A DNA stretch of 64,000 nt from Mobula hypostoma (Eukaryota), in contig NC_086121.1 in the NCBI RefSeq assembly GCF_963921235.1, forward strand, positions 26,784,001 to 26,848,000. The letters are read 5' to 3'. Below the pieces are notes generated by a model. The model was not told the DNA's origin. It saw only the letters and a list, made by a program, of their open reading frames with translations, and ran no database searches. The position numbers and the translations under genes were made by a program. Below, piece by piece: positions 3,015 through 60,162 of the stretch. Each line of letters begins with the position of its first letter. Position 1 is the stretch's first letter.

Positions 3015-3098
3015 AAGAGCAACACACAGAAAACGCTGGAGGAAATCAGTAGGTCAGGCAGCATCTACAAGCAGTTGACGTTTCAGGCTGAGACTCCT
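3015..3098 (-). mobile_element. Short Penelope-like (PLE) terminal-repeat insertion, truncated inside the hammerhead
   Basis: Matches the tail of the 4052-4762 element; flanked by the 8-bp direct repeat agcttatg (3007-3014 / 3099-3106). Confidence 0.7.
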
Positions 3099-3838
3099 AG
3101 CTTATGTGTTGTTTCCTCGTAAAGCGATCCATTCAACTCCATTCTGTCCCCCTGCATCTCGCGAGGTTTGTTAGCTTTCCTTCAGGTGGACAATTCACTG
3201 TTTAGTTATCTCCAGTGCACCACACAGCCTACCAGCTTCTCTCATGTTTCCTGGATGAAGCCGCTGTATGTTTCCTCCTTGCCCCAGTCCAGGTGCTAGG
3301 CTTTTCCAGACAGTTTTAGCAAGATTAAGACTGAGTGAACCATTACAACTGTGATGCATTTTTCTTCTCACTTATTTCCACAGGAAATCATGTTAACATT
3401 TCCCACAGCTTAGTTTAGGACCTCAGAGGGTACATTTTGATAGCTCATAGCCTCGCGAATGAGGCCATTCTTCCTATCTGCCCAGTGCTGCTATTGGCTA
3501 TTCAACCAGAGGCGGTAACACACACTCAGTTCTGGATAACAACATGAGAAATAGAAGCAGGAGCAGTCCATTAAGCTCTGTGAGCCTTCCTTGCCATTCA
3601 AAACAATCAAGGTAGATCATTTACCTCAACACTACCTCCTGTACTAACCCAATGTCAAGCAATCTTCTTATCAACTGTTGCTCACCTCCATGTAACATTA
3701 ATCCCAGTACATACTCAAAACAAGCCATAGGGTGTGGAGAAATGGTGTGGGAGTCATGATCCATTTGTGGACAGTACAATACCATAGACAGGCAGTATTT
3801 TGTCACCTAAGAAAGAAATTGTAAACCAGTAGATGACA

Positions 3839-3844
3839 CGCGCG

Positions 3845-3906
<62 letters not shown>
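3839..3906. repeat. (CG)7(CA)27 compound microsatellite
   Basis: Read directly from the sequence. Confidence 0.97.
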
Positions 3907-3907
<1 letters not shown>

Positions 3908-4051
3908 CCGTGATGCTGAGGGAACCAAGGAAGGAGTGGTTGCCACACTATGATTGGGAATTGGGAATGTACAAAGACTGAAGAGCAGAGAGGTCGGAAG
4001 GTGGCTGGGTGGGATTATGAACACCTTTTGGAACTGACTAGGAGCACAGCA

Positions 4052-4762
4052 AAGAGGAGAAACTCTGCAGATGCTGGAAATCCGAGCAACACACACAAAA
4101 CGCTGGAGGAACTCAGCAGGCCAGGCAGCGTCAATGGAAGAGTACAGTCGATGTTTCAGGCCAAAAGCCTTCGGCAGGACTGGAGAAAAAAAAGCTGAGG
4201 AGTAGATTTTGAAGGTGGGGGGAGGGGAGAGGAAAACACAAGGTCGTAGGTGAAACTTGAAAGGGGAGGGATGAAGTGTAGAGCTGGGAAGTTGATTGGT
4301 GAAAGAGACAGAAGATCATGGAGAGGGAGGTGATGGGCAGGCAAGGAGATAAGGTGAGAGAGGGAAAAGGGGATGGGAATGGCAAAGGAGAGGGAGGGTG
4401 GGGAGGTGGGGCATTACCGGAAGTTTGTGAAATCGATGTTCATGCCATCAGGTTGGAGGCAAATGGAATACAAATGCTGTTCCTCCAACCTGAGCGTGGC
4501 CTCATCACAACAGTGGAGGTGGCAACAGATGGACATATCGGAATGGAAATGGATAGTGGAATTAAAATGGATGGCAACTGGGAGATCCTGCTTTTACAGG
4601 CAGATGGAGCATAGGTGCTCGGCGAAGTGGTCTCCCAATCTACGTTGGGTCTCACCGCTATACAGAAGGCCACACCAGGACCAACAGACATAGTAGATGA
4701 CCCCAACAGACTCACGGTGTTGTCTCACCTTGAAGGAGTGTTTGGGGCTCTGAATAGTGGTA
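4052..4762 (-). mobile_element. Penelope-like retroelement 3' fragment: degenerate GIY-YIG endonuclease, 3' UTR and hammerhead-bearing terminal repeat
   Basis: Minus strand reads approximately PKHSFKVRQH.ESVGVIYYVCWSWCGLLYSGETQRRLGDHFAEHL...DLPVAIHFNS...DEATLRLEEQHL...QPDGMNIDFTNFR*, a PLE-type GIY-YIG domain. 9-bp TSD agcacagca (4043-4051 / 4763-4771). Confidence 0.88.
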
Positions 4763-5029
4763 AGCACAGCATTCTATTTCACGGATAGGTCATTAACTCC
4801 CAACCACCCAGCTGGGGGAGCTTTACTCTGCATCGCACCAGGCAGACGCTTCAGAGTTTCAAGGTCCTGTCTGGTGTAGACAATGTTGCTGATCCCACAC
4901 TCTCTCTGTCACAAGGACTTTTATACTCGCTGCATTGCCTAGTCTCCACCCCAACCTACCCGTATCTAGAAACATCCCACTGCCGGATTTGCAGGATGGA
5001 GCTGGGGAGGAGATGCAAGGTGTTGAAGC

Positions 5030-5322
5030 AAAGCAACCACACAATCAATCCTGGAGGAACTCAGCAAGTCAAGAAAGTTGACGTCTCAGTCAGAAGCCCT
5101 TCTTCAGGACTGGAAAGGAAGGGGGCAGAATCATTCTCACATCATCTCCACCCACCCACCTTCCCCTTCACCTGCCATCTTATACTCATTACACCAATTT
5201 CTTATTCTGGCTTCTACTCCTTCCTTTCCAGTCCTGATTAGGAGTTTCAGCCTGAAGCATCCCCACCCCTCCCCCCATAGATGCTGCCTGACCTGATGAG
5301 CTCCCTCAACATTTTGTGTGTG
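5030..5322. mobile_element. Inverted pair of PLE terminal repeats (MITE-like)
   Basis: Left arm ctggaggaactcagcaagtc...ccttcttcaggactggaaagg is the reverse complement of right arm cctttccagtcctgattagg...gatgctgcctgacctgatgagctccctcaacattttgtgtgtg. Confidence 0.7.
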
Positions 5323-5741
5323 ATAGGTAGCATGACATACAGAGACTGGGGCATGACTAAGGAGACTGAGAGGTGGGTGGGGTCAAATGTCAGATGCAGG
5401 TGAGAGACAAAGGAGGAGGAATCAGGACTCAGTGATAAACACCAGGAGGTCCGCAGATGCTGGAGATCCAAAGCAACACGCATAAAATGCTGGAGGAGCT
5501 CAGCAGCTCGGGCAGAACCTGTGGAAAAAAGTAAACAGCCGATGGTTCGGGTCCAGACGGGATTGGGGGGAAGATGCCAGAATAAAAAGATGGAGAGAGG
5601 GGAAGGAATCTGACGAAGGTAATAGGCAGTCTCCCACCCTGCAAAAATTCATTTCAGGGAGGTCTCAACCTCATTTCAGGGAGGTCTGAACCTGATAGCA
5701 GTCTGTGTCAATGAATTTGTTAATTTTGCAAGACATCAGAT

Positions 5742-6047
5742 TCACAAGTGTTTTGCGAGACAGCTGACTTTGGAATTCTTTCTTAATGTGCCACGTACAA
5801 TAGCTGCTGTCTTGGTTGATGAGCAGGCATAGTTTTTTGCTATTTCTGAATCAGGAAACATTTTCCTGAATAGCTTGCCTGTGTGTTTACACACCTGGAA
5901 TGGCAGGTTATGCTCAACGATGAAAGATGTAAAGTACACCTCAGCTCTAGTGACCTTCTCTGTCAGACTTTGGTTTTCTGCTGAAAAGAACTGTGAAATA
6001 CTTGAGTAGCCCTCCCTGCGCTTAGCCTCCCTAATATGTTGTGGACC
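5742..6047 (-). pseudogene. hAT-like transposase exon remnant
   Basis: After acceptor ttatttctcttag it reads GPQHIREAKRREGYSSISQFFSAENQSLTEKVTRAEVYFTSFIVEHNLPFQVCKHTGKLFRKMFPDSEIAKNYACSSTKTAAIV. The EHNLPF...FPDS.IAK...C..TK motif is typical of hAT-related transposase N-terminal regions. Confidence 0.7.
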
Positions 6048-14000: not shown

Positions 14001-14353
14001 AGATGATTTCTAAAAAGTCACAATTACATAATCCCTTACAAAACAGACCTAGTCATTGACAATATTGTGCAAAAAAATAACATTGTCATAAAAACACACC
14101 CATCTGGTTCCACAATATAATTTGGAGGAGAAAATATAAACTTAATTAAGGTGGTCTATTTGCCACCCCAGATGATTCTGAAAAGCATTCACCAAAGCTG
14201 AGCAGCCAACATCAACCGAGGCACCGAATTTGGAAACAGCAACGTTACCCTCAACTTAATCAAATGTGTAAAATTCTCCTCACAAATATCTAGAGACTGG
14301 GGAATCAAACTGTGAGAGCTGTCCCACAGACTAAACAAGCATGAACTTGACAC

Positions 14354-14483
14354 AGACACGAGGAAATCTGCAGATGCTGGAAATTCAAGCAACACACACA
14401 AAATGCTAGTGGGACACAGCAGGCCAGGCAGCATCTATAGGAAGAAGTACAGTCGATGTTTCGGGCCGAGACCCTTCGTCAGG
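14354..14483 (-). mobile_element. Solo PLE terminal-repeat unit (~130 bp) with a complete hammerhead core
   Basis: Same family as 4052-4762; 9-bp direct repeat acttgacac (14345-14353 / 14484-14492). Confidence 0.85.
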
Positions 14484-14486
14484 ACT
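14451..14486 (-). ncRNA. Minimal type I hammerhead ribozyme motif
   Basis: Minus strand is AGUC CUGACGA A GGGU-CUCG-GCCC GAAA C AUC^GACU: intact CUGANGA and GAAA boxes, 4-bp stem II, stem I AGUC/GACU, NUH triplet. Confidence 0.8.
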
Positions 14487-14547
14487 TGACACCATTATTT
14501 ATATTCATAGAATCATAAATGTGCCATTCATTGTATTGCAGAGTTAT

Positions 14548-15838
14548 GGACCTGGACCCATTGTAACTTGCCTATCGTCAAAATAGGTCAACAGCAGACA
14601 AAATCTCAATGGCTCTCCAAACGGCCTTAGAACACCTAGACAACACAAACACCTATGTCAGGATGCTGTTCATCGACTATAGCTCAGCATTTAATACCAT
14701 CATTCCCACAATCCTGACTGAGAAGTTGCAGAACCTGGGCCCCTGTACCTCCCCCTGCAATTGGATCCTCAGCTTCCTAACTGGAAGACCACAATCTGTG
14801 CGGATTGGTGATAACAGATCCTCCTCGTTGACGATCAACACTGGCGCACCTTAGGGCTGTGTGCTTAGCCCACTGCTCTACTCTCTATATACACATGACT
14901 GTGTGGCTAGGCATAGCTCAAATACTATTTATAAATTTGCTGACAATACAACCTTTGTTGGTAGAATCTCAGGTGGTGACGAGAGGGCGGACAGGAGTGA
15001 GATATGCCAACCAGTGGAATGGTGCCGCAGCAACAACCTGGCACTCAACGTCAGTAAGACAAAAGGAAGCGTAAGAGGAAGGAACACATACCAATCCTCA
15101 CAGAGGGATCAGAAGTGGAGAGAGTGAGCAGTTTCAAGTTCCTGGGTGTCAAGGTCTCTGAGGATCTAACCTGGTCCCAACATATCGATACAGTTATAAA
15201 TAAGGCAAGACAGCGGCTATACTTCATTAGGGGTCTGAAGAGATTTGGCATGTCAACAAATACACTCAAAAACTTCTATAAATGTACTGTGGAGAGCATT
15301 CTGACAGGCTGCATCACTGTCTGGTATGGAGGGGCTACTGCACAGGAACAAAAGAAGCTGCAGAGGGTTGTAAATCTAGTCAGCTCCATATTGGGTACTA
15401 GCCTACAAGGTACCCAGGACATCTGCAAGGAAAGGTGTTTCAGAAAGGCAGCGTCCATTATTAAGGACCTCCAGCACCCAGGGCATGACCTTTTCTCACT
15501 GTTACCGTTAGGTAGGAGGTACAGAAGCCTGAAGGCACACACTCAGCGATTCAGGAACAGCTTCTTCCCCTCTGCCATCCGATTCCTAAATGGACATTGA
15601 ACCCTTGGACACCACCTCATCTTTTAAAAAAAAATACAGTATTTCTGTTTTTTGCACTTTTTTGAATCTATTCAATATAAGTATACTGTAATTGATGTAT
15701 TTATTTAATTATTATTATTTTAAAATTTTATTTATTATTTATTTTTCTCTTCTATATTACGTATTGCATTGAACTGCTGCTGCTAAGTTAACAAATTTCA
15801 CGTCATATGCCAGTGGTAATAAACCTGATTCTGATTCT
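14548..15838 (+). mobile_element. Rex1/Babar-type LINE, RT domain to 3' tail, disrupted
   Basis: [18 protein letters not shown]...GAP*GCVLSPLLYSLYTHDC...YKFADNTT; C-terminal ERVSSFKFLGV...RFRNSFFPSAIRFLN; tail aataaacctgattctgattctg. Confidence 0.92.
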
Positions 15839-24135: not shown

Positions 24136-25239
24136 CATGGAGCATAAAATTAATGTACTTGGAATGAGTTACCAAGAACAAAACTGAAGGCCCTTGCTCC
24201 TGAAGTGCACAAAGTCACTCATTAGGACCTCTTGATTAACATTACCATCCAGGTCAGTGGAACAGGGAATTACACTGGTGATGGGTCATAGTCGCTAAAT
24301 TTTCTATGGTGCTAGTACCCAAATTTCATTAATGCTGAAGGTTGTGGGTGAGTTGTAAACTTGGATGGGTCAATGTTTTCTGCACTACTGGAAATTCTCT
24401 GACCAGCTTCTCAGTTTCACACAATCTGCTGTAGGAACTCAGTAGGTCAAGCAGTATCTGTAAAAGGAATTGTTAATGTTTCGGGTCAAAAATTGACAAC
24501 GTCACACATCCCACAGATGCTGCTCAACCACTGAGTTCCTCTGGCACGTTGTCTGTTGCTGCAGCATTTGCTGTGCCTTTTGTCTCCAGCTCCTCAGTTT
24601 TTCTCTGATCCTGAGGAGCTGGCTGACAATCAGTCAGTCCAACACTTGGCATCGGATCCTCAGGCAAGAAGCTGTCTCTTAATTAAGAATCTGTGCAGAA
24701 GTTGGGAGAAGAAAGGTCAATCTCCTTGGAAGGGAATCACTGCCTTCCTACAATACCTTTCAACAACAGAGACGACAGTACAGGGGTGGCAAACTGACAC
24801 CAAAGCCCCGAGGATTGTTGGACAGGTGATGTGTTACGATCATCACCTGGGATTCATTTTAAGGTGCAGATTGATACATCATCAGCAACCGTCGTACAAA
24901 TTAATTTTAGAGCAAAGATGAACCTGGCAAAGATTTCACAGCCAAAATAAGAACAAGGCAGATCACTGCCGACTGCACTTCAAAGGGTGATAGTCATTTC
25001 AGCACAGGCCATTTACTGTTCTTCCAGCCAAGCAAAGGCAAGAAACAAAGCTCTGATTGATCATGTCAAGCAACAAGTAGTTCTTTCTAGAACGTCGCCA
25101 ACTCATGCAGCCTCTGCAGAAACTCTTGTGTCCTATTGGAAGTGCCAAATACTTGTTGATACTGAGAAAGCTGCCTGCAGTGTAGAGACCCCTGATAGTA
25201 ACCTCTCTGCCTGGAACTGCGTTTCTTATGTTGCAGGTA

Positions 25240-25570: not shown

Positions 25571-27839
25571 GGTATTATGTGAGCTCCACCAACCGTGGAC
25601 ACCCAAATGTCTCATTCACACAAAACCAAGATTTGGGGACAACAAAAAAAAAGGGAGATGTTCCTTTAAACAGATTATAGTTCAATAATTGAAAATTGAA
25701 AATAGCAATTGAAAATAGAACTACAGAAGCTGCAAATTAAAACAGATGCTGTAAACACTCAGCTGATTAGAGAAAGAGAAATAGAGTTAAACATTCCCAG
25801 TTAAAGACCCTTATCACACACTTCGAAGAAGCATTGAACTGAAATTGCTAACTCTGCAGCTCTTTCCACAAATGCCGCCTGACCTGCTGAGTGCTGATAG
25901 TATTTCTGTTTTAACCTTTAGCGAAGTAGCATGCAGGATAATTTCTCACCTCCATTAAGGGCTACAAACTTTAAGACTTAGGGAATGAGAAGAGCAACTT
26001 GAAAGGTGCCCAAACAATAGTCTGTGCGAGGAATTGAACCATGTCTCGTGTTGCAGCTTGCATTGCTGTATAGTATTCCAAGCGCCAAAGTGTTCTAAGC
26101 CTTGCATCTCCTCTGTTGTATCTCACTACAAACCTACTTAACACGTTCTGAACCCCAAAGATGCCAAGTTGATAATCCACCTGCCAGACTCTCCACCAGC
26201 CCGCCCATTTGGCTCATTCCTAGTTTTTTTTAAAAAGAGGAAGCTGCATCAGGAACAAGCTCCACCTCATCCCTGCCCAGTTGCCCTCCTTGATCTCCCT
26301 GGTTCTCCTTGGTCTCCATTCTATTTGATCTTTTACTTCCACCTTCGCTCAGTTGCTGCACAGCCTGGGAATCACCCTCTTTTGTTCTCCAGTGCTCTGG
26401 ATCCCCAAAATCAACCTCAAAACTATCACAATTTCTGACACTCTCTCATGGTGGAGAACTTGCTTTATTACCTCTTCATCTCCTTGGATAGAATGCCCTA
26501 AATCAATGATAACCTATTTCGGTGACCCCCGTCAGTACAGCCACCCTCCTCCCAAAAAACTGGCACCCATCCTCATATATCCTACAATCCACATGGCTCA
26601 CTTCCACCAACTAAAGTGAACAAATGTGATTATCCCTGCAGCATAATCAAAATTCAATTGAGTAGCCCAAGAATTATGTACACCCTGTGATTAACTTTAC
26701 TCAAAGTCTCACTGTTGAATATGACCACATGCCCACTGCCTCCAATAAGGTCCATGGTTTTGCTTTGCATCTTCAATGGGTGTGATTGGATGTTCAGAGG
26801 ATTGCACTACAACCAAGTTGTGCACACAAAATGTTGGGACCCATTTCCACAAAACTCACTAGTTCATGGGTATCCAACACCCTATACAGGTGATTACATT
26901 CTACCCAGTGGTTCAACTATTCTTTGAGACACTACATCAGGTCTCGCTATGGCAACTGACAATCTGCCAGTTTCCCTTTGCCCAACTGTCCTGGAAAGTT
27001 TAACTCACTTAACTGAAGTTAAATGCCAGTTTAACTCAACAGTAATAGCAGGGCTAGGATTTCTAGGCTCAAGTGGTTCAGCCTGTTCCTGCCACACTTA
27101 TTGCATCCACTCCCAGATCTCTTACATGCACACATTTTGAATATTCAGAAGTCAATCCCAAAGAACACATTTTGACATGAACTGTCAACTATTTGTTCCC
27201 CACAGGTAAACATCTGCTATGTTAAATATTTGCACCAAGATTTTTTTGTTTCCAGATTTCTAATCTCTGTAGTTATTGATGAAGGCTTCTGATACATTAA
27301 CCCTGTTCCTCTCTCCACAAATGCTGCCCAACCTGTTGAGAATTGTCAGCACCTTCTAGTATTTCATTGTATAGATACTGTATATGCTCAGCAAGGAAAC
27401 AGCCTCAAAAGAAACTGTACAGAAGTGTTCGTCATACAGTATTGAAGGGGTTACTAACGGTATGGAACCATTGTTTACTCAACAGGGATGAAAGTAATTC
27501 TCAGGATAAATGCATAGAAATGCCAAAACAAAAACAGAAGAGATGGAAATATCCAGCATCTGTAGAAAAAGAAACGGAATTAACCTTACAGCTCCAAGAC
27601 CCTTCCTCAGAATTTTCTGATTTTATTTTAGATTTTCAGCCAGTTTTTTTTTGCTTTACTTTACGTGCAGAAATTCGATGCATTTATTCATTATTGTTCT
27701 CCTGCTGGGGTCCTTGTAATTAAGCAAAGAAGGGGTTACTTTCTCTTCAGATTTTATTCAAAAATAGCCTATCTATTTACGAGCAATTTGAACGGGCTTG
27801 GTGCCACTCGTGGTGTGATTACAAGATCAACCTAGTACT

Positions 27840-32142: not shown

Positions 32143-32306
32143 CGCAAACAACAGGAATTCTGCAGATGCTGGAAATTCAAGCAACACACATCAAAGTTGC
32201 TGGTGAACGCAGCAGGCCAGGCAGCATCTCTAGGAAGAGGTACAGTCGATGTTTCAGGCCAAGACCCTTCGTCAGGACTAACTGAAGGAAGAGTTAGTAA
32301 GAGATT
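32143..32306 (-). mobile_element. Solo PLE terminal-repeat unit with hammerhead motif at 32244-32279
   Basis: Minus strand AGUC CUGACGA A GGGUCUUGGCCU GAAA C AUC GACU; very similar to 48002-48150. Confidence 0.85.
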
Positions 32307-33498: not shown

Positions 33499-35184
33499 AG
33501 AAAGGATCTTGAATGAGAATTGCTCAGGGAAAGAAGGGAGATGGTGAGATTTTTTTTTCTGTGCTCTATTGAAAGAATCAAATTGACTTCCACACCTTGG
33601 TGCTACTTGCTGGCTGATTCAGTGAGGACACTACAAGGGTAAGGGTATGTTGAGGTTCCCCTCCAGGTGAGTGTCCACTGAAAACTGAAAATGCCCATGG
33701 CGACTTTCCAATCAAATTACCAAGAAATCTGGTCATTCCTGGGGTGGGCAATGAATTCTTTTTAGTGAGTTCTCACTTAGAGGTGGCTGTTAAAATTTTC
33801 TTTTTTCCCACTGGCTCCAACCCCACCCCTGCATTGGCCCTTACTCTGACCCACAATGTAGAACTATTAGCAGTACTGTGATAATGAGACACTTTAAAGG
33901 GAGGTGAAGTGGATATTGTTGGGGCCAATAGTAATGTCATGGCTGTCCTAATACTTTCCCACGTACAGCTCTATGCGGCACCAGCCCCACGCTATGTAGG
34001 CCGCTAGGGAAAGTGCCTTGTTTTCCACAAGATTCCACACAGATGCATGTGTGACACATACTTACACACACTCATATACACACTGCATACATTCTCACAC
34101 ATCCATTCACAACACTCTGCCGCTCACTAACTCACTACATCCACACACTCAGTACTGCAGCCAGTCAGCAGACACACATACACACATTCTCATACACAGA
34201 TGGAATAGGAATCAGAATCAGGTTTAATATTTCCAGCATCTGCAGATTTCCTCGTGTCCGTGTTGTGAAATTTGTTGTCTTTACGGCAGCGGTCCAGTGC
34301 AATACATAATAATAAAGGGGGAAAGACGTGAATTACAGTAAATATATATATATAGAGTTACAAGTAGTGCAATTTTGTTAAAAATTAAAACAAGTAGTGG
34401 GGTACTCTGGACACTGCAGTAATACAAGGTGGCAGTTTCCAACCATTTATGCAGGGAAATTAGGATTAGGAAATTTAAAAAATCACCATGCCATTGATAT
34501 CAAAATAATGCAAAATTTAAACAAAACTCAGCGCAGTTCATTTGTCCTCACACTCAATTCTTATCACGCACACAACCAGAGCCATGTCCCCACACTTGCA
34601 CAAGCCCACCCGCCTGCACCTCAACCTCTCACTCACAGTCCTAAAGAACAGTCATGTACCTACCCACTCCCCCAGACCCTGGACTTGTCACTACAGCCAT
34701 TCACCTCTTCCACACACTCCCATTGAAGATGACTGGCAACAAGAGAGTGGAGGACGAGGCTTAGAGGGGATATGAAGGGAACGTTTCTCACACGGAGAGT
34801 GGCTGATATCTGGAACACACTGTCAGAGAAACTGGTGCAGGCAGATGCAATCACATTTAAGATGCAATTGGAGAGGCAGTCGAATAGCTAAGGCATAAGA
34901 GGCTATAAACCCAATGCTGATTAGTCTGGACGGGTACCACAGTCGGCATGGGCCAAAGAGTCTGTTTCTGTGCTGAACGTGGTGAATAGTTAACAGGCCT
35001 GTAATGGAAACAGGACTATAGATCAAAAGGACCAGTAAAGGACTCATTCACTCTACTTACCAGTAGGAGAGGGGAAAAGGAGGAAAACCTCACCCAATAG
35101 CCCCCATCCCCTTCACCTTCGCCACTTTATTTGCCTGGAACTCAGGAGAAGAAAGAATCAGATGCTATGGATGTGGCTCATAAA

Positions 35185-38136: not shown

Positions 38137-38865
38137 CTTCATAGAGGGATCAGAAGTGGAGAGAGTGAGCAGCTTCAAGTTCCTCGGAGTCAAGATCTCT
38201 GAGGATCTGACCTGGTCCCAACATATCGATGTAGTTATAAAGAAGGCAAGACAGTGGCTATACCTTATTAGGAGTTTGAAGAGATTTGGCATGTCAACAA
38301 ATACACTCAAAAACTTCTATAGTTGTACCGTGGAGAGTATTCTGACAGGCTGCATCACTGTCTGGTATGGAGGGTCTACTGCACAGGACCGAAAGAAGCT
38401 GCAGAAGGTTGTAAATCTAGTCAGCTCCATCCTGAGCACTAGCCTACAAAGTACCCAGGACATCTTTAGGGAGTGGTGTCTCATAAAGGCAGTGTCCATT
38501 ATTAAGGTCCTCCAGTATCCAGGGCATGCCCTTTTCTCACTGTTACCACTAGGTAGGAGGTACAGAAGCCTGAAGGCACACACTCAGCGATTCAGGAACA
38601 GCTCCTTCCCCTCTGCCATCCAATGCCTAAATGGACATTGAAGCTTTGAACACTACCTCACTTCTTTAAATATACAGTATTTCTGTTTTTGCACATTTTT
38701 TGAATCTATTCAATATACTGATTGATTTACTTGTTTATTTATTATTATGTTTTATTTTATTAATTATTTTTTTCTCTCTCTGCTAGATTATGTATTGCAT
38801 TGAACTGCTGCTGCTAAATTAACAAATTTCACGTCACATGCCGGTGATAATAAACCTGATTCTGA
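38137..38865 (+). mobile_element. Rex1/Babar LINE 3' fragment (young)
   Basis: Open frame IEGSEVERVSSFKFLGVKISEDLTWSQH...RFRNSSFPSAIQCLNGH; nearly identical to 15100-15838. Confidence 0.9.
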
Positions 38866-40143: not shown

Positions 40144-41123
40144 AAAGCACTGTGATTTCAGGGCAGGGATAGTACTTTCAAACAGCATCGACAGGGCAGA
40201 GTGAATATATGCAATCACCGTTGTCAGGTCAGTGAGGATATTTGCAAACTACGATGTCAGGACAGTAAATGTTGTATATTGTGCTGACTTTGGAAGTCGG
40301 ATAACTTACACTTCGCTTAACTCATGAATGTGAAGTCATTCATATCCACAGCACAGTGTCAGGAGGATGTGACTACCGACACACGGTAGTATCGGATGGA
40401 TATCTACACCTTGCTGGATTACACCTGCACATATATTAACATACTACAGCGGTAGGTCAATCGGAATACCTAGACCCTACACTGCTACTTGGTGTGAATA
40501 AACTTTAAATGAGATCAAAGCAGTTTGGGATAGCTATATGGCGAGAGTGGAAACATTTTCACTTGAGTAAATTTGAAAGTTAGGTAATATAACACTAAGT
40601 TTTTTGTTCAGTGTATATTAGGATATACTGTGTAAGTTTCTACTTGCTACTTCGCGAAATAATACTGATGCATTGCTTGTGAGGGTATTCAGAGAAAACA
40701 AAATTCTGACTGGTTGAAAGTTACTGAGCAGAATTTTCAACTTCAGGGGGCGTTGCTGCCAGTTTCATTGATTGCACAGACTGAGAAACATTGTAAAATC
40801 ACCCAGATCCCACACGTTAGGGTGTAAATAGGCACACAGCTCTCACCACAGAGTGTGTAAGTATTCACACTGCTCTCACCATAGTGTGTAAATCTTCACA
40901 CTGCCCTGACCACGGAGTTTTTAAATGTTCACGCTGCCCTGAACACAGAGTGTGTAAATGTTCACGCTGCCCTGAACACAGAGTGTGTAAATATTCACAC
41001 TGCCCTGACACCATTTTGGTGAAAGTCTCTCACGGCCCTGACTAAGCAGGATACATTTTGTTTTGTGGGAGACTTACCTTTATATTGAGGAAAATACGTG
41101 GAAGGTACTGCACAGCGCAGTCC

Positions 41124-45157: not shown

Positions 45158-45197
<40 letters not shown>

Positions 45198-45715: not shown

Positions 45716-47162
45716 TCTCCACCCTGCTCACTGTGGCATCCTGTGGGTACACAGTTGTACATCTTGCAGTTTATTTGCAACACTGACCACCTCCCATCAC
45801 GCATTAGCTCCCATGCAGGGTTAACTGTAAGCATGGGAGTTGTTGGGGAATCTGAGCCATTCTCCTATCAGACCTGGGGGGGGGTGGGGGTCACTTTCAT
45901 GACATTTCTTGCTGCTTAATTGCAGCTACGGTATGTTTTAAACTCTGGAGAGACAAGAGACCACAGACGCCGGAATCTGGAGCAACAAGTGTTCTGGAAG
46001 TCAGTGGGTCAGGTTAATCATAGTCATAGTCATACTCTATTGATCCCAGGGGAAATTGGTTTTCGTTACAGTTGCACCATAAATAATTAAATAGTAATTA
46101 AATAGGTTGAAACCTGATGCAGATTTTTAAACTGGGACATTGGCAATCCCTGACCTCACACATTTTTAATTCAGACTTATACCTTCATCCAGGCACAGAG
46201 GCAAGTTTGAGTCATAGTTCAGAGCTAAATTGGTCCCATGCCCTGGACCAGGATATCTGACCAGGAATCATATACCCTTGGGCTGTTGTCATCTTGAATG
46301 GAATGAGGTGCATCCTAAGGTCAAACAGTTTGTGCACGTCCACTCTCCCAGCCTACACATGAAGGAAGGACAACAAAAACTGGAAACAAATATGTCAGCA
46401 CGAAGAAGGAGGAAAAGTCTCTAGGGTGAAATGAGGAACTTTTAGACCAAACTGGAATAATTTAGGAAAACAAAACTTTCCATTGCCAATTCTTAAAATT
46501 ACAGTAAAAGACATAGCATTCTGATTGGACACTTGAAACATGAGCGGGGTCATTGTCCAGAACAGGACAAGATGGAGCGGAGATGTAATGACGATCTGCA
46601 TCTGCTTTGTTACATTGTAACTCAACCTTATCACATCTCAAGCTCAACCTGGGCTATTAGTAAGATGATTGCAGCACTATTGGAACAAGATTCCCACCCC
46701 TTTACTCAATGCAGCTGGGTTTTACTACTACATTGCGGGGAGAGTTTGCCAAGTCATTTCTGGCAGCGGAGAGAGGAAACCGGCTGTTGGTGGATTTTTG
46801 TACTTGGACCCAACTTGTCTTTGTATCATTTTTTTCGCCCAAGCGGGCTGGTCTGTGTTACAGAATCTGCTGGCTGTAAATCCATTGGCAACTTTGCTGT
46901 GACTCAAGTCTTGGCTGCAGGGCTCAGAAGCAGCTGCTCCATTTTGCTTCCGTCTGCTATGATGTGTTAGCATTCTGAAACTGTCCACCAGCCCCGTAAA
47001 CAGTTCAAGACTCCACTGACTGCGCATTAGTGGGTGACATCTGAGCTCCTGTACGTCCACTGCACAACTTGTGAGCACCAGGACAGCCATTGTGGAATTA
47101 ACCCTTCTAATCCCACTTACCACCACTGCTTGTGGTGGGAGCAATGGGCCTTTAACACTGCC

Positions 47163-47331
47163 ACACCCGCAAAATGCTGCAGGAACTCAACAGATGAGGC
47201 AGCATTTACAGAGAGGAATAAACAGCTGATGTTTAGACGTATCTGACATCAACATCCATAGAGGCTGCTCAGTTCCTACAGCATTTTGTGCTCGTTGCTC
47301 TGGATTTCTAGCATCTGCAGAATCTCTTGTA
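47163..47331. mobile_element. Inverted PLE terminal-repeat pair (older)
   Basis: aaaatgctgcaggaactcaac... / ...cagttcctacagcattttgtg; imperfect TSD tttaacactgcc / ttttacactacc (47151-47162 / 47332-47343). Confidence 0.65.
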
Positions 47332-48001
47332 TTTTACACTACCCATCCATTCCAAGAATGTTTTGAGGCAGGTGCTCAAACAAAATCAGGCACCCAGCCA
47401 CAATGGGAGATCCTTAGGCCGACTGACACACACTCTGGCAAAAAGAGGCAGCTTTTTAGGAGTGAATTAAAAGAAAAAGAAGTTCTGGGAGGTGAAGTTG
47501 GGCATGTAAATGCAAGGAAGAACGGAAAGCTAGGATTAGAGGAACAGAGAAATCTTGGCACAGCAGTGAGGCAGGGATTGAGACCCAGGCTTGGTCATGA
47601 CTTTGGACATTGCGAATGTGGAGTTTACACACTTGCTCTGTGGCCACCCCAGTTTCCTCCTACATCCCAATGGCACCATCACTGTAAGTCAGTGGCAAAA
47701 GAAGCAAAGGGATATTGGTTGGCATGAAAAATCAAATTAGTTAAAGACTTATGGGGAAATAAGGAGGGTGGAACCGGACTGATGCAATTGGTCCATCAGA
47801 GTTGGCATGGTCCAGATGGGCTGAATGGTGTCATTCAGTAATGGAAGTAATATAGTTGTGAAGTCCAGGTTGATATAGAGTCGTGAGGCCTTTGGAAAGG
47901 AATTGCAAACACAAGTGATAGTTTCTCACTTTATCTTCTCATCTCCAAGACTCTCCTTCTCTAGCTAACTTTCATACACTCACCTTCATCCTTACTTAGT
48001 T

Positions 48002-48362
48002 TAAAAACACAAACATGGGGAAACTGCTGATGCTGGAAATTCAAGCAACACACATCAAAGTTGTTGGTGAACGCAGCAGGCCAGGCAGCATCTCTAGGAA
48101 GAGGTAGAGTCCACGTTTCAGGCCGAGACCCTTCATCGGGACTAACTGAACCCTTTTGCCAATCAACTGTCCAGCTCTTGGCTCCATCCCTCCCCCTCCT
48201 GTCTTCTTCTATCATTTTGGATCCCCCCCTCCCCCTTTCAAATCTCTCACTAGCTCTTCTTTCAGTTAGTCCTGACCAAGGGTCTCGGCCCGAAACGTCG
48301 ACTGTACCTCTTCCTGAGATGCTGCCTGACCTGCTGCGTTCACCAGCAACTTTTATGTGTGT
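48002..48362. mobile_element. Inverted PLE terminal-repeat pair with two hammerhead motifs
   Basis: ~110-bp inverted arms; perfect 13-bp TSD tccttacttagtt (47989-48001 / 48363-48375); hammerhead motifs at ~48109-48144 (-) and 48268-48303 (+). Confidence 0.9.
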
Positions 48363-48444
48363 TCCTTACTTAGTTGTTGGATCTTCCACCAAATTCCTTG
48401 AACAATTTCCCATTTAAGGCAGTCAATAAGTCCAAATATACTCG

Positions 48445-49910
48445 GTTCAAAATTCAAAGTAAATTTACTATCAGACTGTAAATAATGTCAACATATACTG
48501 CATTGAGATTCATTTTCCTGCAGGCATTCACAGTAGAACAAAGAAATAAGATAGAGTCAATGAAAAACTACACACAAACAAGGACTGACAAACAACCACT
48601 GTGCAAAAAAAGACAAACTATGGAAATTTAAAAAAAATGAACGAGAGAAATTCTGCAGATGCTGGAAATCCAAAGCAACACATGTAAAATGCTGGAGGAA
48701 CTCAGCAGGTCAGGCAGCATCAATGGAGAGGAATAAACAGTTGACGTTTTGTCTGAGACCAAGACGTCAGCATCCATAGCACCTATGGACACGAATAAAC
48801 AATCAACATTTTGGGCCGAGAACTTTCTTCAGGGCCAAGAAGGAAGCCAAAATAATAATAATAATAATTAAAATAATACTGAGAACATGAACTGCAGTGT
48901 CCTTGAAAGTGAGCCCGTAGGTTGTGGAGTCATTTCAGAGCCGAGGTGAGTGGAGCCTAACGGTTGAAGGGTAATACTATTCCTGAACCTGGTGGTGTGG
49001 CACTTAAGTCTCCTTCCCGATGGCAGCAGCGGGAAGTGAGTGTGGCCTGGATGCTGGGGATTCCTGACGATGGACGTTACTTCCTCGTGACTGCACTCCT
49101 CATAGATGTGCTCAATGGTGGGGAGGGCTTTGCCTGTAATCGACTGGACTGTACCTATCTCTGTTGGGCATTGTTGTTTCCATACCAGGCGGTGATGCAA
49201 GGGCCAGGACACTACCCACTGTGCATCTACAGAAGTTTTAGATGACACGCTGAATCTGTGCAAACTTCTAAGAAAGTAGAGGTGCTGGGGTGCCTGCTTT
49301 GTGAGAACACTTTCTTATTGGCTCCAGGACAAATCCTCTGATATGGTGAAGCCAAAGAATTTAAAGTTACCGTCCCTCTTCACCGCCATTCCTCTAATGA
49401 GGAATGGCTCACGGACCTTTTGTTTCTTTCTCTCGTAGTCAATAATCAGTTCTTTGGGTTTACTGATTTGCGTGAGAGGTCACTGTTGTGACACCATTTA
49501 ACCAGATTTTCAATCTCCCTCCAAATGCTGGTTTGCCACAACCTTTGATTAAGCTAACAGCAGTGGTGTCAGCAGCAAACGTAACCACTGGAGTTGTACT
49601 TAGCCACACAGTCACAAGCATAAAGTGAGTAGAGAAGGGGACTAAGCTCACAGCCTTGTGGTGCACCTGTGCTGATGGTGATTGAAGAGTAGATGTTGTT
49701 GGCCAACCCATACTGACTAGGGTCTGCAAGAGAGGAAATTGAGGGGCCAATTGACGCCTAGGTCTTGGACCTTAGTGATTAGTTTCGAGGAGATGATAGT
49801 GTCGAATGCTGAGCTGAAGTCAATAAAAAGCATTCAGATGTATGCATCTTCACTGACCAGATGTTCCAGAGCTGAGTGTAGAGCCAATGAAATGACATCT
49901 GCTGTTAACC
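48445..49910 (-). mobile_element. Degenerate Rex1/Babar LINE with nested PLE repeats (~48640-48845)
   Basis: Minus strand RT remnants (STGAPQGCELSPLLYSLYA..., TFAADTTAV) and tail ttcaaaattcaaagtaaattt. Confidence 0.75.
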
Positions 49911-53420: not shown

Positions 53421-53424
53421 TTGG

Positions 53425-53929: not shown

Positions 53930-54140
53930 AGGAATTCAGCTCACCAGGCAGTATCTAAGGAGGGAAATGGACAGCCGATGTTCCAGATTTCAGCTCATTC
54001 CTCTAGATGATTCAGCAGAGATAACAGATCTTGATCTGAAACGTTGACTGTCCATTTCACTCTATAAATGCTGCCTGACCCACCGCATTCCTCCAGTGTT
54101 TCGTATGTTACTCCGTGTTCCAGCATCCGCAGAATCTTGA
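53930..54140. mobile_element. Inverted PLE terminal-repeat pair (older)
   Basis: Right arm ctgaaacgttgactgtcc...atgctgcctgacc...ttccagcatccgcagaatc; left arm is a degenerate reverse complement. Confidence 0.6.
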
Positions 54141-55793: not shown

Positions 55794-56004
55794 CACAGGA
55801 GATTCTGCAGATGCTGGAAATCCAGAGTAACATACACAAAATGCTGGAGGAACTCAGCAAGTCAGGGAGCATCTGTGGAGGAGAATAAACAGTTGACACT
55901 TCAGGTCCTGACGAAGGATCCCGGCCCGAAACGACAACTGTTTATTCCTCTTCATAGAAGATGTCGGACCTGCTGAGGGCCTCCAGCATTTTGTGTGTGT
56001 TGTG
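55794..56004. mobile_element. Inverted PLE terminal-repeat pair with plus-strand hammerhead motif (55904-55940)
   Basis: ggtcCTGACGAaggatcccggcccGAAAcgacaactg; near-TSD tgaa[c/t]atgag (55784-55793 / 56005-56014). Confidence 0.8.
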
Positions 56005-56077
56005 TGAATATGAGACAAGGAACATACCCAGAATTGATATCTGGTTGTCAAGACTCGACAATAAACTTTTCCCCAGG

Positions 56078-56457: not shown

Positions 56458-56625
56458 TATAAGTGAATTTTCTGTGACACTGTGCGATAGCAATATTCCC
56501 AGAGAAGGTGGGAGGAAATTAGGCAGGCAAATCAGATTTCATTTTGTCCCAAAGGCAAGCAATATCATCAACAGGACTGTTGGTCAATTTAAAGCCCTTG
56601 GTCACAAGCTATTCATTATTGGCAA

Positions 56626-56633
56626 CACACACA

Positions 56634-56693
<60 letters not shown>
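56626..56693. repeat. (CA)n microsatellite
   Basis: Read directly from the sequence. Confidence 0.97.
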
Positions 56694-56697
<4 letters not shown>

Positions 56698-57684
56698 TAA
56701 CCTTTATTGATTGGATCTGAGCCAGCAACATAATTCCTGCAAACTGAATTGCTGCTGATTGCATCAGTCCACAGAACTCTACTGGAAAATTCATTACAAT
56801 GCATGACACAGGGGACTTTGGCTGCCAGTGGCTCGAGGGCCTTATCAGAATGGTTTACATTAACCTGCCCCATCATTGCTGATTGTATCTCCAGTCTTCA
56901 CCTCTCTCCACACGATGATGTCGACCAAGTATAGGCTGGTGAAGTGAAGGGGTGAGGAGGGGGGTTGTGGGAAGAGGGGAGGGGTGTAGAAATAGAGCTG
57001 GAGTACCTTGTGTTTCTAAACCATCCTTTTCTGAGAATAGTACAGCTCAGTTGGCAACCGCCTTGCCTGTGAGCCACCCTAATGCAATACTGAGGGAATG
57101 CCACGCAGTCCGTGGTAGCAGCTTCTAGTGAGACATAAAACTGAAGCCCCTTCCACTCTCTCAAGCAGACTTTAAAATCCCTGTGGCTCTCTCTAAGATT
57201 ACTTGCAGTGTCCTTGTCAACAATCATCCTCAGTTGATGTCGTCAGAACGAATCAACCAGTCATTACTGCACCATAGCTTGTGGGAGCTTGCACGTCACC
57301 AGGTGAAGGCCCTGCTTCTTGCAACAGTGACGACTTTTCAACTACTCAATGCGATGAGAAAAGAGCTGCCAGATACAGGTCTTTTCATTTGGTTTTAGAG
57401 CCTTTAACAAAAGAGACACAGAACTAATGAACAAACTTGGAACTTACAGAAAAAACTGCCAGCTTTGTGCATGAAAAGTGCAGACACTCATGGTTTTTAA
57501 CTTCCAGAAACATGACTTACTGCTGTGATCAGAGAGTGAATAAATCGTCTGTGTAACTGCTGCACAGAGCAGAACTACAAGAATGAAATGACACCCGTGT
57601 CGGCTGGCGCAGCTACTGGTGAGAAAGGGAGCATGTAATCAGTACAAATGGGCTAAACTGGAAATGCTGTTTTCATCCCTGATG

Positions 57685-60162
57685 AGTTGTATCTAATTTT
57701 TATGTTTTCTAACTCCGAAATGAATCGAAAGAAAAACACAGGAGAGCCGGAGATAACTTGGGTATGTTTAGTTTTGTTTCCTTACTTTAGTGAGGTGCTG
57801 ACACATGACAGGGGTGGTGCAATGACATTTGTCATTCACGTACTTTGTACATATACCCGTCATGAATTATGTCAACAAACAAGAATGCTTAATCAAACAA
57901 TGTATTTACAATATCACTCAAATATTGCTGAAATACACAACGCTCCTCCATGCTTAGTTATAAACTCCAACTCAATATAGAATGCATCTTAACATAAATA
58001 TACATATATATATATATATATATAAAATACAACTACTATATTGACATCCACAGCAGAGTAAAATTTTAAATTGTCCCACTCATCCTAAGGATTTAATTGC
58101 TGTGGAGGGTTTCTTATCCTTGTGGGATAACACCCTTCCTGACAAGGGGCCACTCGGTTCGGCAGGTGAGACTTGTGGTTGTGAAACAATCTCAGGATCT
58201 GGGGCCTCCTCTGTGGTGATTGTAGGAGTTGCCTCGGGGCTTGCTGAAAGTGGTTCTGACGGCTCCAGACACCTTTTTTCTCCAACAATTTACTTTGCTC
58301 TCCTCAACTGATCAGCGCATCGTCTCTAGATGACATTACGCACAATCTCCACTGTGCAGGAGAATGGTCCAATTCTGTCCTTAATCCTCCCGAGTACCTG
58401 TTTTTAAGTCTTTCGCAAGGACCGTTTGTCCATGAGTGAAACATTGCATCTTCTTGTTTGAGGAGCCCTCAATTTGTCTCAGTTGTACTCCACCTGAGAC
58501 TGGGTTTGAGGAGATCCAAGTGTGAATGCAAGGGACTACCCAGGAACAACTTAGCTGCTGATGTGTTGACTGTGGAGTGTGCTGCGTTGCGATATGCGAG
58601 AAGGAAATTGGTGAGCTTCTGATTCCGTGTCAGTGTAGTGTGTTCTGCCGACATTGCTCACGGTGTGTTCTTTACACTCTGGACAAACCTCTCCACCAAG
58701 CTAGTTGTAGCTGGGAGGTATGGTGCAGATGTAATATGTCTTATTCCGCAAACATGAGAAAATCTGCAGATGCTGGAAATTCAAGCAACACACACAAAAT
58801 GCTGGTGGAACGCAGCAGGCCAGGGAGCATCTATAGGAAGAAGTACAGTCAACGTTTTGGGCTGCGACCCTTATGTCTTATTCCATTCATTTTCAGGAAT
58901 GACTGAAACGGTTCTGCAACAAGCTGTGGACCATTGTCACTGACTAAGTGTTCTGGAACACCAGTCCTTGATAAGAGGCTTCTCAACACATCAACAGTGT
59001 GCGAGGCTGTAATGGAGGCTATTGTGAACACTTCTGGCCACTTTGTAGCTGCATTCACTACCACCAAGATATTTGAGCCCATGAATGGTCCGACAAAATC
59101 CACATGAATCCTCTACCAGGGCAATGCAAGTCATTCCCAGGGATGGAGGGGCACTGCTCTCGGCTCCTTCTGGACATGTTAGGATCCCAAACAGTGCATG
59201 GCAAGTTGCGCGATCTGCTACTATCCCAGGCCACCAGAAAAAGCTTCCAGCCAATGTTTTCCTTTTGACCACGCCTAAATGACTGGCATGTACTGTAGCT
59301 CCTCTAACACTAGCTCTCAACTGTGATAGAACAGCAACTCTCAAACCCACATAAGGCAATCTCTGTCAAAGGCAAGTTCATCCCGGCTCTTGTAAAAATG
59401 GGGAAAATGGAACTTCTATTGCACATTACATCTATTTTGGGTTGACCTGAGACAGTATGGGGTCTTTTCTGATGTCACTTTGGATCATCGCTGTTATAGA
59501 GAGACTTCCAATTTGCGTTAAGGAGAATATGTCAAGAGGAATGTCCTTTTTCGTAAATTTTTAGGGTATTTCCTTTTCCAAGGGTAAACAGGAAATCTAC
59601 TTGCATCCCATGATTACTTGTCCTCTCGAATTTGATCATGTAACTGTGCCCTCCAAGAAACAGAGCCTATCTCTGTATTCTTGTTGCTGCTGTTAGTAGA
59701 ACATTCTGGGATTGAAAATGGACACCAGTGGTTGATGGTTAGTAATGAGGGTAAAGTCTCTCCCATACAAGTACTGGTTGAAAGGTTTTACATCCCAAAC
59801 CAGATTTAAGGCCTCTCTGTCGATCTGTGCCTACTTTTTCTCTGCAGCGGTAAGCAAATGAGATCCAAAGGCAGTGGGGTGGTCACTTCCATCACTCATA
59901 ACAACTGACATGACTGCACCTACATCAGAAGGGGAGGTGGCACAGGCAAGCTTCACTGGGTGATATGGATCATAATGTGTGAGTGCAGTGTCTGATATCA
60001 CCGTTTCCTTTGTTGTTTGGAAAGCCTCCTCACACTGCTTTGTCATTCACCTACTTCATACATATATACCGTCATGAATCATGTAAACAAACAAAGGGTG
60101 CTAAATCAAACAATATGTTTACAATATTGCTCAAATATTACTGAAATATTAAGTACACAACA
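57685..60162 (-). mobile_element. Degenerate Gypsy (Metaviridae) LTR retrotransposon, gag and most of RT deleted
   Basis: Minus-strand RT/RNase H connection (TKQCEEAF...LTHYDPYHPVKLAC...DVGAV) precedes the integrase core (DFVGPFMG...KWPEVF...GVPEHLVSDNGPQ). 3' LTR ~57685-57942 is preceded by a purine-rich tract; partial 5' LTR at 60039-60162. Confidence 0.88.
58748..58871 (-). mobile_element. Solo PLE terminal-repeat unit inserted in the Gypsy integrase
   Basis: Perfect 13-bp TSD tatgtcttattcc (58735-58747 / 58872-58884); truncated at hammerhead stem II. Confidence 0.9.

What the first reader, a model, noticed from the sequence alone, without database searches (positions are those of the whole stretch)
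3015..58871. Dispersed family of short hammerhead-ribozyme-bearing mobile units derived from a Penelope-like element
Seen: at least 12 insertions share a ~100-nt tail (gactgt...gatgctgcctggcctgctg...cagcattttgtgtgtgttgc...ccagcatctgcaga). In the better-preserved copies the tail is preceded by AGUC-CUGANGA-A-stem II-GAAA-C-GUC^GACU, a type I hammerhead with no intramolecular stem III loop but a palindromic ACGU. The copy at 4052-4762 is attached to a GIY-YIG endonuclease remnant, which identifies the parent. Separate TSDs of 8-14 bp show independent insertion, even for 80-170 bp units. Established: PLE terminal repeats carry minimal hammerheads thought to cleave as dimers. Inference: a retrozyme/SINE-like non-autonomous ribozyme family has amplified in this lineage. 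I do not know whether it has been described as such.
Basis: partly seen in the sequence, partly recalled or inferred. Interest (0 to 1): 0.8.

Follow-up and report, generated by a model that had tools for sequence, protein, structure and literature searches.

The report
Truncated Penelope retrotransposon ends with hammerhead
The repeats are real, but they are the short end-pieces that a known kind of jumping gene (a Penelope-like element, which carries a minimal hammerhead ribozyme near its end) leaves behind when copying stops early, so this is an ordinary, already described phenomenon in a ray genome and not a new ribozyme-driven mobile family.

Summary
All share a module made of a minimal type I hammerhead (HHR) followed by 68 or about 102 nt. 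Five insertions have significant 8-13 bp target-site duplications (TSDs). The copy at 4052-4762 runs from a GIY-YIG endonuclease remnant through a 3'UTR into the HHR and tail.

The inference of a SINE- or retrozyme-like self-propagating family is not supported:
- 5' ends are scattered from +70 to about -620 relative to the cleavage site.
- Every copy that reaches past the HHR continues into the Penelope-like element (PLE) 3'UTR.
- There is no promoter head, no tandem array, and no 5' end at the cleavage site.
- Six arm pairs lie head-to-head (0.15 expected by chance).
- The 3' ends fall into two classes about 35 nt apart, matching the optional "tail".

All of these are published hallmarks of PLE integration.

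No copy keeps a fully intact HHR. The HHR core is no better conserved than the flanks. Rfam hammerhead models do not match.

This scan has already noted the same family more than 400 times elsewhere in this ray genome.

Verdict: a new member of a known kind, of low interest.

The parts
3015..3098 (-). Solo 84-bp insertion. It starts at -21, just after the CUGANGA box, so the HHR is incomplete. It ends at the short 3' end.
   Evidence: 8-bp TSD at 3007-3014 and 3099-3106; nhmmer E 3e-16.
4052..4762 (-). The only ORF-linked copy, 5'-truncated in the linker before the endonuclease domain. It runs GIY-YIG remnant, 3'UTR, HHR, then the long tail.
   Evidence: 9-bp TSD at 4043-4051 and 4763-4771; sequence read.
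4417..4764 (-). GIY-YIG endonuclease C-terminal remnant of the PLE ORF. It has an in-frame stop at 4594-4596; the natural stop codon is at 4414-4416.
   Evidence: tblastn with P0001: 64% identity over 120 aa, E 9e-36. Homologues P0011, P0019 and P0076 carry RVT_1 plus a C-terminal GIY-YIG domain. Pfam does not recognise the two short pieces themselves.
4146..4181 (-). HHR of the ORF-linked copy, about 235 nt after the ORF stop codon. It is inactive as it stands (A6 to C; ACGUC to ACAUC).
5029..5324 (.). Head-to-head pair: minus arm about 5029-5150, plus arm about 5150-5324. Both arms extend about 70-100 nt into the 3'UTR, and both end at the short 3' end.
   Evidence: no clear TSD.
5437..5620 (-). 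Copy with upstream 3'UTR homology and an internal deletion of the CUGANGA box. It ends at the long 3' end.
14354..14486 (-). Solo insertion of about 130 bp: the whole HHR plus the long tail. It is one of the two copies that keep all core nucleotides (ACAUC at helix III).
   Evidence: 9-bp TSD; descriptor hit at 14449-14488.
24380..24579 (.). Head-to-head pair in which both arms are truncated inside the HHR (about -12 and about -8).
25744..25909 (.). Old, diverged plus-strand copy (25828-25909), with a possible weak inverted partner (25744-25811, E 0.06).
27276..27610 (.). Two old decayed copies: plus strand at 27276-27360 and minus strand at 27554-27610.
32144..32306 (-). Copy of about 165 bp that starts about 28 nt upstream of the HHR, in 3'UTR-homologous sequence, and ends at the long 3' end. 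All core nucleotides are kept (ACAUC).
   Evidence: only an imperfect TSD.
34229..34263 (+). Orphan 35-nt tail extension with no other part of the element.
   Evidence: 97% identical to 14350-14384.
47160..47333 (.). Head-to-head pair. The minus arm (47160-47250) starts at about -28 and ends at the short 3' end. The plus arm (47251-47333) starts at about +14 and ends at the long 3' end.
48002..48362 (.). Head-to-head pair inserted as one event. The minus arm (48002-48150) ends at the long 3' end. The plus arm (48153-48362) ends at the short 3' end and reaches about 115 nt upstream of the HHR into the 3'UTR.
   Evidence: 13-bp TSD at 47989-48001 and 48363-48375; colinearity with the ORF-linked copy.
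48643..48835 (-). Partial direct tandem. One HHR plus the first 30 nt or so of tail is joined to a second HHR plus the long tail at a CTGAC pentamer that both segments share. The two HHRs lie 60 nt apart.
53930..54136 (.). Head-to-head pair: minus arm 53930-53990, starting at about -9; plus arm 54012-54136, with a decayed HHR and the long 3' end.
55794..56010 (.). Head-to-head pair. The minus arm (55794-55912) starts at about -13 and ends at the long 3' end. The plus arm (55905-56010) starts at about -31 and ends at the short 3' end.
58748..58871 (-). Solo 124-bp insertion that starts at -21, so it lacks the CUGANGA box. It ends at the long 3' end.
   Evidence: 13-bp TSD at 58735-58747 and 58872-58884.

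Best explanation
These are dead-on-arrival insertion by-products of autonomous Penelope-like retrotransposons (EN+ PLEs, with RT plus a C-terminal GIY-YIG endonuclease) in a ray genome.

In the source element the order is ORF stop, about 235 nt of CT-rich 3'UTR, a minimal type I hammerhead, then 68 or about 102 nt up to the point where reverse transcription starts.

Inferred mechanism, taken from work on other PLEs:
1. The PLE ribonucleoprotein cuts both target strands a few bases apart, which produces the 8-13 bp TSDs.
2. It primes cDNA synthesis at one of two internal RNA sites about 35 nt apart. This gives the short or long 3' end, the long one carrying the optional tail.
3. It usually stops or switches template within 100-250 nt, so most insertions keep only the HHR-plus-tail module or part of it.
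4. When both cut strands prime, the result is a head-to-head inverted pair flanked by a single TSD.

The hammerhead is a passenger of the parent element's terminal region. In the insertions it decays neutrally and does not drive their mobility.
For: Shown here:
- The one long copy joins the GIY-YIG remnant, the 3'UTR, the HHR and the tail in one TSD-flanked insertion.
- Homologues of the remnant have the RVT_1 plus C-terminal GIY-YIG architecture.
- Copies that extend past the HHR are colinear with that 3'UTR.
- 5' ends are scattered and none lies at the cleavage site.
- 3' ends fall into two classes, at +64..+73 and about +91..+103.
- There are six head-to-head pairs against 0.15 expected, P<1e-5. 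One pair is flanked by a 13-bp TSD. Three of the six pairs have one short and one long 3' end.
- There is one partial direct tandem.
- The HHR core is no better conserved than the flanks, and only 2 copies keep all core bases.

From the literature:
- min-HHRs sit in PLE terminal repeats; most occur as dispersed single motifs attributed to truncated PLEs, and some as pairs on opposite strands (PMC4209133).
- PLE insertions show strong 5' truncation, an adjacent inverted 5'-truncated copy, and a 30-40 bp tail often at one end only (PMC8557442).
- The Anolis PLE cleaves and extends both strands. It starts RT at two internal sites about 85-90 nt past the HHR cut site, and HHR cleavage is not needed for insertion (PMC11167929).
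Against: - Only one window was available, so there are only about 5 TSD-defined solo insertions. A modest pile-up of 5' ends cannot be excluded: two solos start at exactly -21, and several arms start at -28 to -32, the 5' edge of the HHR.
- 24 of the 25 arms are shorter than 300 bp, a stronger skew to short copies than simple random truncation would predict.
- No full-length element was available, so the position of this module in the intact element (pLTR or ORF start) is inferred, not seen.
- The integration mechanism is carried over from Anolis and Drosophila PLEs and was not tested in this species.
Confidence: 0.82

Rival explanations
1. The short units are full-length cDNA copies of short RNAs, not aborted copies of long ones. 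Transcripts would start just upstream of the HHR, for example from a promoter in the terminal repeat of any longer genomic copy. They would contain the internal RT entry site and be mobilised in trans by the PLE protein. The HHR edge would then be a true 5' boundary, although each new copy lacks the promoter and is sterile.
For: - Several 5' ends fall at -28 to -32: 14483/14486, 55905, 47250 and perhaps 54012.
- An earlier follow-up on another window of this genome also reported a pile-up at the ribozyme edge (that result was not checked here).
- RT initiation in PLEs is internal and independent of the RNA 3' end (PMC11167929), so any RNA that contains the entry site could be used.
- Copies are extremely short.
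Against: - Two clean solo insertions start at -21, inside the HHR. Others start at about -60, about -115 and about -620, and pair arms start at -8 to -13 and at +14.
- No transcript data are available.
- The sample is too small for a test of clustering.
Confidence: 0.12
2. One reading: a self-propagating non-autonomous family headed by the ribozyme, SINE-like or retrozyme-like, in which HHR self-cleavage and possibly circular RNAs define and amplify the unit.
For: - The copy density is high, about 25 arms in 64 kb.
- Units of 84-165 bp have their own TSDs.
- Animal non-LTR retrozymes are proposed to derive from PLE terminal repeats (bioRxiv 10.64898/2026.07.22.740005).
- One partial tandem places two HHRs 60 nt apart.
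Against: - There are no tandem arrays of the unit.
- No unit boundary lies at the cleavage site, as circular or HHR-processed templates would give.
- There is no pol III-type head.
- There is no common 5' end, and longer copies run into the PLE 3'UTR.
- The HHR is the minimal variant without a helix III loop, not the canonical retrozyme type.
- The core shows no extra conservation.
Confidence: 0.05

Closest known systems
Minimal hammerheads (min-HHRs) in the terminal repeats of metazoan Penelope-like elements (Cervera & De la Pena 2014, PMC4209133)
   Same: - Type I topology with a short helix I (4-5 bp).
- An unpaired nucleotide between A9 and G10.1, and a G10.1-C11.1 pair.
- No helix III hairpin, but a palindromic 15.2-16.2 (ACGU), which implies action as a dimer.
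- Linked to a PLE ORF in a few copies and otherwise dispersed as many single motifs, with some pairs on opposite strands 100-700 bp apart.
   Different: - Helix II here is 4 bp with a tetraloop, not the 7-8 bp reported for Schistosoma families.
- The host is a ray. I found no paper describing PLE hammerheads in elasmobranchs.
- All copies in this window are mutated.
Canonical EN+ PLE insertion anatomy (Craig et al. 2021, PMC8557442) and the Anolis Poseidon PLE in vitro system (PMC11167929)
   Same: - Heavy 5' truncation.
- An inverted 5'-truncated copy abutting the 5' end.
- Partial tandems.
- An optional extension of about 35 nt at one end, corresponding to two RT start sites.
- RT start roughly 70-100 nt downstream of the HHR cut site.
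- C-terminal GIY-YIG endonuclease.
   Different: - In Anolis the HHR overlaps the ORF start. Here it is seen about 235 nt after the ORF stop, and its relation to the next unit's ORF start could not be examined.
- The TSDs of 8-13 bp and the two 3' end classes are read from old genomic copies, not from an assay.
Animal non-LTR retrozymes (Cervera & De la Pena 2020, PMC7229834; Li et al. 2026 preprint)
   Same: Type I hammerhead, small size, a likely PLE origin and PLE-dependent mobilisation.
   Different: Retrozymes are tandem repeats of 150-450 bp with canonical HHRs and loop-loop contacts, and they are expressed as circular RNAs. The units here are dispersed singles or inverted pairs with the minimal HHR and no arrays.

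Membership tests
EN+ Penelope-like element (PLE) | ORF with a reverse transcriptase followed by a C-terminal GIY-YIG endonuclease | tested here: inconclusive
   The window copy keeps only the endonuclease C-terminal part (tblastn 64% identity over 120 aa, E 9e-36). No RT fragment of this element is in the window. Full-length homologues of the remnant have RVT_1 plus a C-terminal GIY-YIG domain. Pfam does not score the short broken pieces themselves.
EN+ Penelope-like element (PLE) | Insertion anatomy: strong 5' truncation, an adjacent inverted 5'-truncated copy, partial tandems, and an optional 30-40 bp tail at one end | tested here: met
   - 24 of 25 arms are shorter than 300 bp.
- Six head-to-head pairs against 0.15 expected.
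- One partial tandem.
- Two 3' end classes about 35 nt apart, differing between the arms in 3 of 6 pairs.
EN+ Penelope-like element (PLE) | Pseudo-LTRs, meaning a full unit preceded by a partial tandem copy | not testable with these tools
   The window holds no full-length copy, and DNA for the related ray assembly could not be fetched.
PLE minimal hammerhead (min-HHR) | Conserved core CUGANGA ... GAAA ... UH with helices I and II in type I order | tested here: met
   The descriptor scan finds it intact at 14449-14488 and 32242-32281. The majority residue of 13 aligned copies reproduces the full core.
PLE minimal hammerhead (min-HHR) | No helix III hairpin; palindromic 15.2-16.2 that allows a dimeric helix III; an extra nucleotide between A9 and G10.1 | tested here: met
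   GAAA is followed directly by CG-UC. ACGU is kept in about 7 copies and decayed to ACAU in about 8. The bulged A at -21 is present in all copies that cover that position.
PLE minimal hammerhead (min-HHR) | Self-cleavage, as a dimer or assisted by protein | not testable with these tools
   No assay was possible. Published min-HHRs cleave poorly in vitro (PMC4209133), and the Anolis one needs the PLE protein (PMC11167929).
Rfam hammerhead families (types I, II, III, HH9, HH10) | Score at or above the family gathering threshold | tested here: not met
   No hammerhead hit at gathering thresholds. None at E<=10 on the whole window, nor on a 91-nt slice around the best copy. This is expected, because these models require a closed helix III.
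Animal non-LTR retrozyme | Head-to-tail tandem repeats of a 150-450 bp unit carrying a canonical type I HHR | tested here: not met
   Tandem Repeats Finder finds no array of the unit. The only tandem is one partial 60-nt offset.
Animal non-LTR retrozyme | Expression as unit-length circular RNA | not testable with these tools
   No transcript data.
SINE | Discrete 5' end with an internal pol III promoter head (tRNA, 7SL or 5S derived) | tested here: not met
   No tRNA-like sequence in the window. 5' ends are heterogeneous, and longer copies continue into the PLE 3'UTR.

The most novel reading that the evidence does not exclude
The short units may not be random truncations. They could be copies of a preferred minimal substrate, an RNA that begins at or inside the hammerhead and contains the internal RT entry site. 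In that case the hammerhead region, through its fold or through bound PLE protein, would set the 5' boundary in vivo. This would make HHR plus about 100 nt the natural minimal mobilisable module of a PLE, and the ray genome a large natural record of it.
Probability: 0.12. Interest if true: 0.45.

Novelty: new member of a known kind. Interest (0 to 1): 0.15.

Why it matters
The finding matters little on its own. It adds a ray family to the known picture of Penelope-like elements carrying minimal hammerheads.

It also shows, in old genomic copies, signatures that were worked out biochemically in an Anolis element: two RT start sites and priming on both target strands.

Its practical value is for annotation. 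These very dense short repeats, about one arm per 2.6 kb here, should be masked as PLE fragments and not reported as new ribozyme genes or new SINEs.

A genome-wide survey of their ends could give in vivo statistics on where PLE reverse transcription starts and stops.

Tried and rejected
- **Rfam.** Searches at gathering thresholds, at E<=10 on the whole window, and on a 91-nt slice gave no hammerhead hit. The models do not cover the variant without helix III, so this says nothing against the motif.
- **Pfam and the Atlas.** Pfam on the two ORF pieces gave nothing meaningful, and neither did the protein atlas. The pieces are too short and decayed.
- **Word-index protein search.** This found nothing because of its length window. 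The exhaustive HMMER search did find homologues.
- **Fetching a full-length relative.** Three short hits are not on record. Two distant full-length PLE contigs, L001 and L002, show no hammerhead within the contig and are too remote to help. A third has no DNA available. As a result, cross-lineage covariation of helices I and II and the position of the module in an intact element could not be tested.
- **RNAcofold of the HHR segments.** It gave domain-swapped dimers, not the double-hammerhead helix III, and was not informative.
- **The idea that the tail is the start of the PLE ORF.** There is an ATG at +21 and the frame is open in many copies. However, the two subfamilies differ by a 1-nt indel, so the frame after about 16 codons is not shared. 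This is left undecided.
- **Snap-back self-priming as the origin of the inverted pairs.** I consider this less likely, because in 3 of 6 pairs the two arms end at different RT start sites.

Full report
**Observation**

The repeat family is real. BLAST with the longest copy and two nhmmer profiles built from window copies find 24 arms plus one orphan tail between 3015 and 58871.

I use coordinates relative to the predicted cleavage site, with +1 as the G after GUC. On this scale the hammerhead spans -32 to +4. It consists of:
- a 4-bp helix I (AGUC pairing with GACU)
- the CUGANGA box
- an unpaired A at -21
- a 4-bp helix II closed by a tetraloop
- GAAA
- then directly C-G-U-C, with no helix III hairpin

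A descriptor scan finds all 12 core nucleotides in only two copies, at 14449-14488 and 32242-32281. In both, the CpG of ACGUC has decayed to ACAUC. Every other copy has at least one core mutation, for example G8 to C at 48266-48305 and A6 to C in the ORF-linked copy.

Five insertions have TSDs that are significant against a positional null:

| Insertion | TSD length |
|---|---|
| 3015-3098 | 8 bp |
| 4052-4762 | 9 bp |
| 14354-14483 | 9 bp |
| pair 48002-48362 | 13 bp |
| 58748-58871 | 13 bp |

**The parent element**

The copy at 4052-4762 reads, on the minus strand, as follows:
- a GIY-YIG endonuclease remnant, with one in-frame stop at 4594-4596
- the natural stop codon at 4414-4416
- about 235 nt of CT-rich 3'UTR
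- the hammerhead at 4146-4181
- about 100 nt of tail

Pfam does not score the two short pieces. An exhaustive HMMER search with the first piece finds 81 relatives. The closest relative (P0001) aligns by tblastn across both pieces at 64% identity over 120 aa, E 9e-36. Full-length relatives (P0011, P0019, P0076) have RVT_1 followed by a C-terminal GIY-YIG domain. That is the architecture of canonical EN+ Penelope-like elements.

The closest proteins are encoded in the large assembly GCA_030144855.1. Earlier notes of this scan call the window's genome a devil ray; I did not check this.

No RT fragment of this element lies in the window.

**Is there a discrete short element?**

The evidence says no.

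1. *5' ends are heterogeneous.*

| Group | 5' end positions |
|---|---|
| TSD-defined solo insertions | -21 (3098), -21 (58871), -29 to -32 (14483-14486), about -620 (4762) |
| Solo with only an imperfect TSD | about -60 (32306) |
| Arms of inverted pairs | about -70 and -100; -12 and -8; -28 and +14; -39 and about -150; -9 and about -30; -13 and -31 |
| Orphan tail | +70 |

No 5' end lies at +1. That is where it would be if hammerhead-cleaved or circular RNA were the template.

2. *Longer copies run into the PLE 3'UTR.* Copies that extend upstream of the hammerhead (48153-48362, 32144-32306, 5150-5324, 5437-5620) are colinear with the 3'UTR of the ORF-linked copy. There is therefore no private 5' head.

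3. *No arrays and no pol III head.* There is no tandem array of the unit and no tRNA-like sequence in the window.

4. *No extra conservation of the core.* Across 13 copies spanning -32 to +68, identity to the majority residue is 79% for the 12 core positions. It is 63% for helix II, 74% for the tail and 87% for the best tail block. The insertions are decaying neutrally.

**Signatures of PLE integration**

Six pairs of arms lie head-to-head with their 5' ends within a few tens of bases of each other. Random placement of 23 arms gives 0.15 such pairs on average, and none of 100,000 simulations reached six. A seventh, weak pair may exist at 25744-25909.

The pair at 48002-48362 is flanked by one 13-bp TSD, so it was a single insertion event.

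The 3' ends fall into two classes. The short class ends at +64 to +73, after a GU-rich stretch ending in UUGCUU. The long class ends at about +91 to +103, after a further 35 nt or so that ends in a similar GUGUUUGC motif. In three of the six pairs, one arm has the short end and the other the long end.

One locus (48643-48835) is a partial direct tandem. A hammerhead plus about 30 nt of tail is joined to a second hammerhead plus full tail at a CTGAC pentamer that both segments share. This looks like a template switch.

These features match published descriptions:
- The purified Anolis PLE protein cleaves and extends both target strands. It starts reverse transcription at two adjacent internal RNA sites that bound the tail, 111-118 nt into the ORF with the hammerhead cut site 26 nt into it, so about 85-90 nt downstream of the cut site. 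It does not need hammerhead cleavage for insertion (PMC11167929).
- Cervera and De la Pena reported minimal hammerheads in PLE terminal repeats. They found thousands of dispersed single motifs 'probably related to truncated PLEs', and dual motifs on opposite strands 100-700 bp apart (PMC4209133).

**Mechanism**

The best explanation is as follows. Autonomous PLEs were active in several waves; pairwise identities among copies range from about 72% to 91%. Each wave left mostly abortive insertions.

The steps shown here are the anatomy, the TSDs, the two 3' end classes, the inverted pairs and the neutral decay. The steps inferred from other PLEs are dual-strand cleavage and priming, internal RT initiation, and early termination or template switching.

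The hammerhead is retained in at least two subfamilies and in older copies. This suggests it is maintained in the master elements, but its role was not tested here and remains unsettled in the literature.

**What remains open**

The sample is one window.
- Two solo insertions start at exactly -21, and several arms start at -28 to -32. An earlier follow-up on another window also reported a pile-up at the ribozyme edge (not verified here).
- 24 of 25 arms are shorter than 300 bp.
- A minority reading is that many units are complete copies of short RNAs that begin near the hammerhead and contain the RT entry site. Even under that reading the copies would lack a promoter and would be sterile.

**Novelty**

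The kind of element is known, and I found no paper on PLE hammerheads in elasmobranchs. I therefore class this as a new member of a known kind. This scan has already recorded the same family more than 400 times in this genome.

Rfam hammerhead models do not detect the motif. This reflects the missing helix III, not the absence of a hammerhead core.

Noticed in passing
window 48762-48835 (-): Two hammerhead motifs lie 60 nt apart in direct orientation. They are joined where the tail's CCTGAC meets the hammerhead's CCTGAC. This looks like a microhomology template switch, and it is the only dimer-like arrangement in the window.
   Followed up: partly
window 34229-34263 (+): An orphan 35-nt PLE tail extension, 97% identical to the tail at 14350-14384. 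It sits directly after a different repeat that ends in aatcagaatcaggtttaat, and no other part of the element is present.
   Followed up: no
window 62855-63439 (+); 15115-15597 (+); 38111-38638 (+): Fragments of other retrotransposons. One is an RVT_1 reverse transcriptase piece (E 1.7e-15). Two ORFs match Pfam ALKBH8_N. None of them is hit by PLE proteins in tblastn, so they are probably LINEs.
   Followed up: partly
window 29474-30877 (+): A 467-aa open frame with no Pfam match, inside the only GC-rich stretch of the window (28-32 kb, 52.7% GC).
   Followed up: partly
window 40822-41041: A tandem repeat of a 33-bp unit, about 5.7 copies at 82% matches, unrelated to the PLE family.
   Followed up: no
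tail of most copies, e.g. window 14354-14434 (-): The tail begins with an ATG at +21, and the frame stays open to the end in many copies (MLPGLL/MLPDLL...). The two subfamilies differ by a 1-nt indel after about 16 codons. Whether this is the start of the PLE ORF, as in the Anolis element, is unresolved.
   Followed up: partly
tail, +17..+27 and +75..+87 of each long copy: The start of the tail (agatgctgg/cc) and its end (ccagcatct) are reverse complements, so the RNA between the hammerhead and the distal RT start site can close into a long hairpin. This may correspond to the stem-loop reported at the RT entry site of the Anolis PLE.
   Followed up: partly
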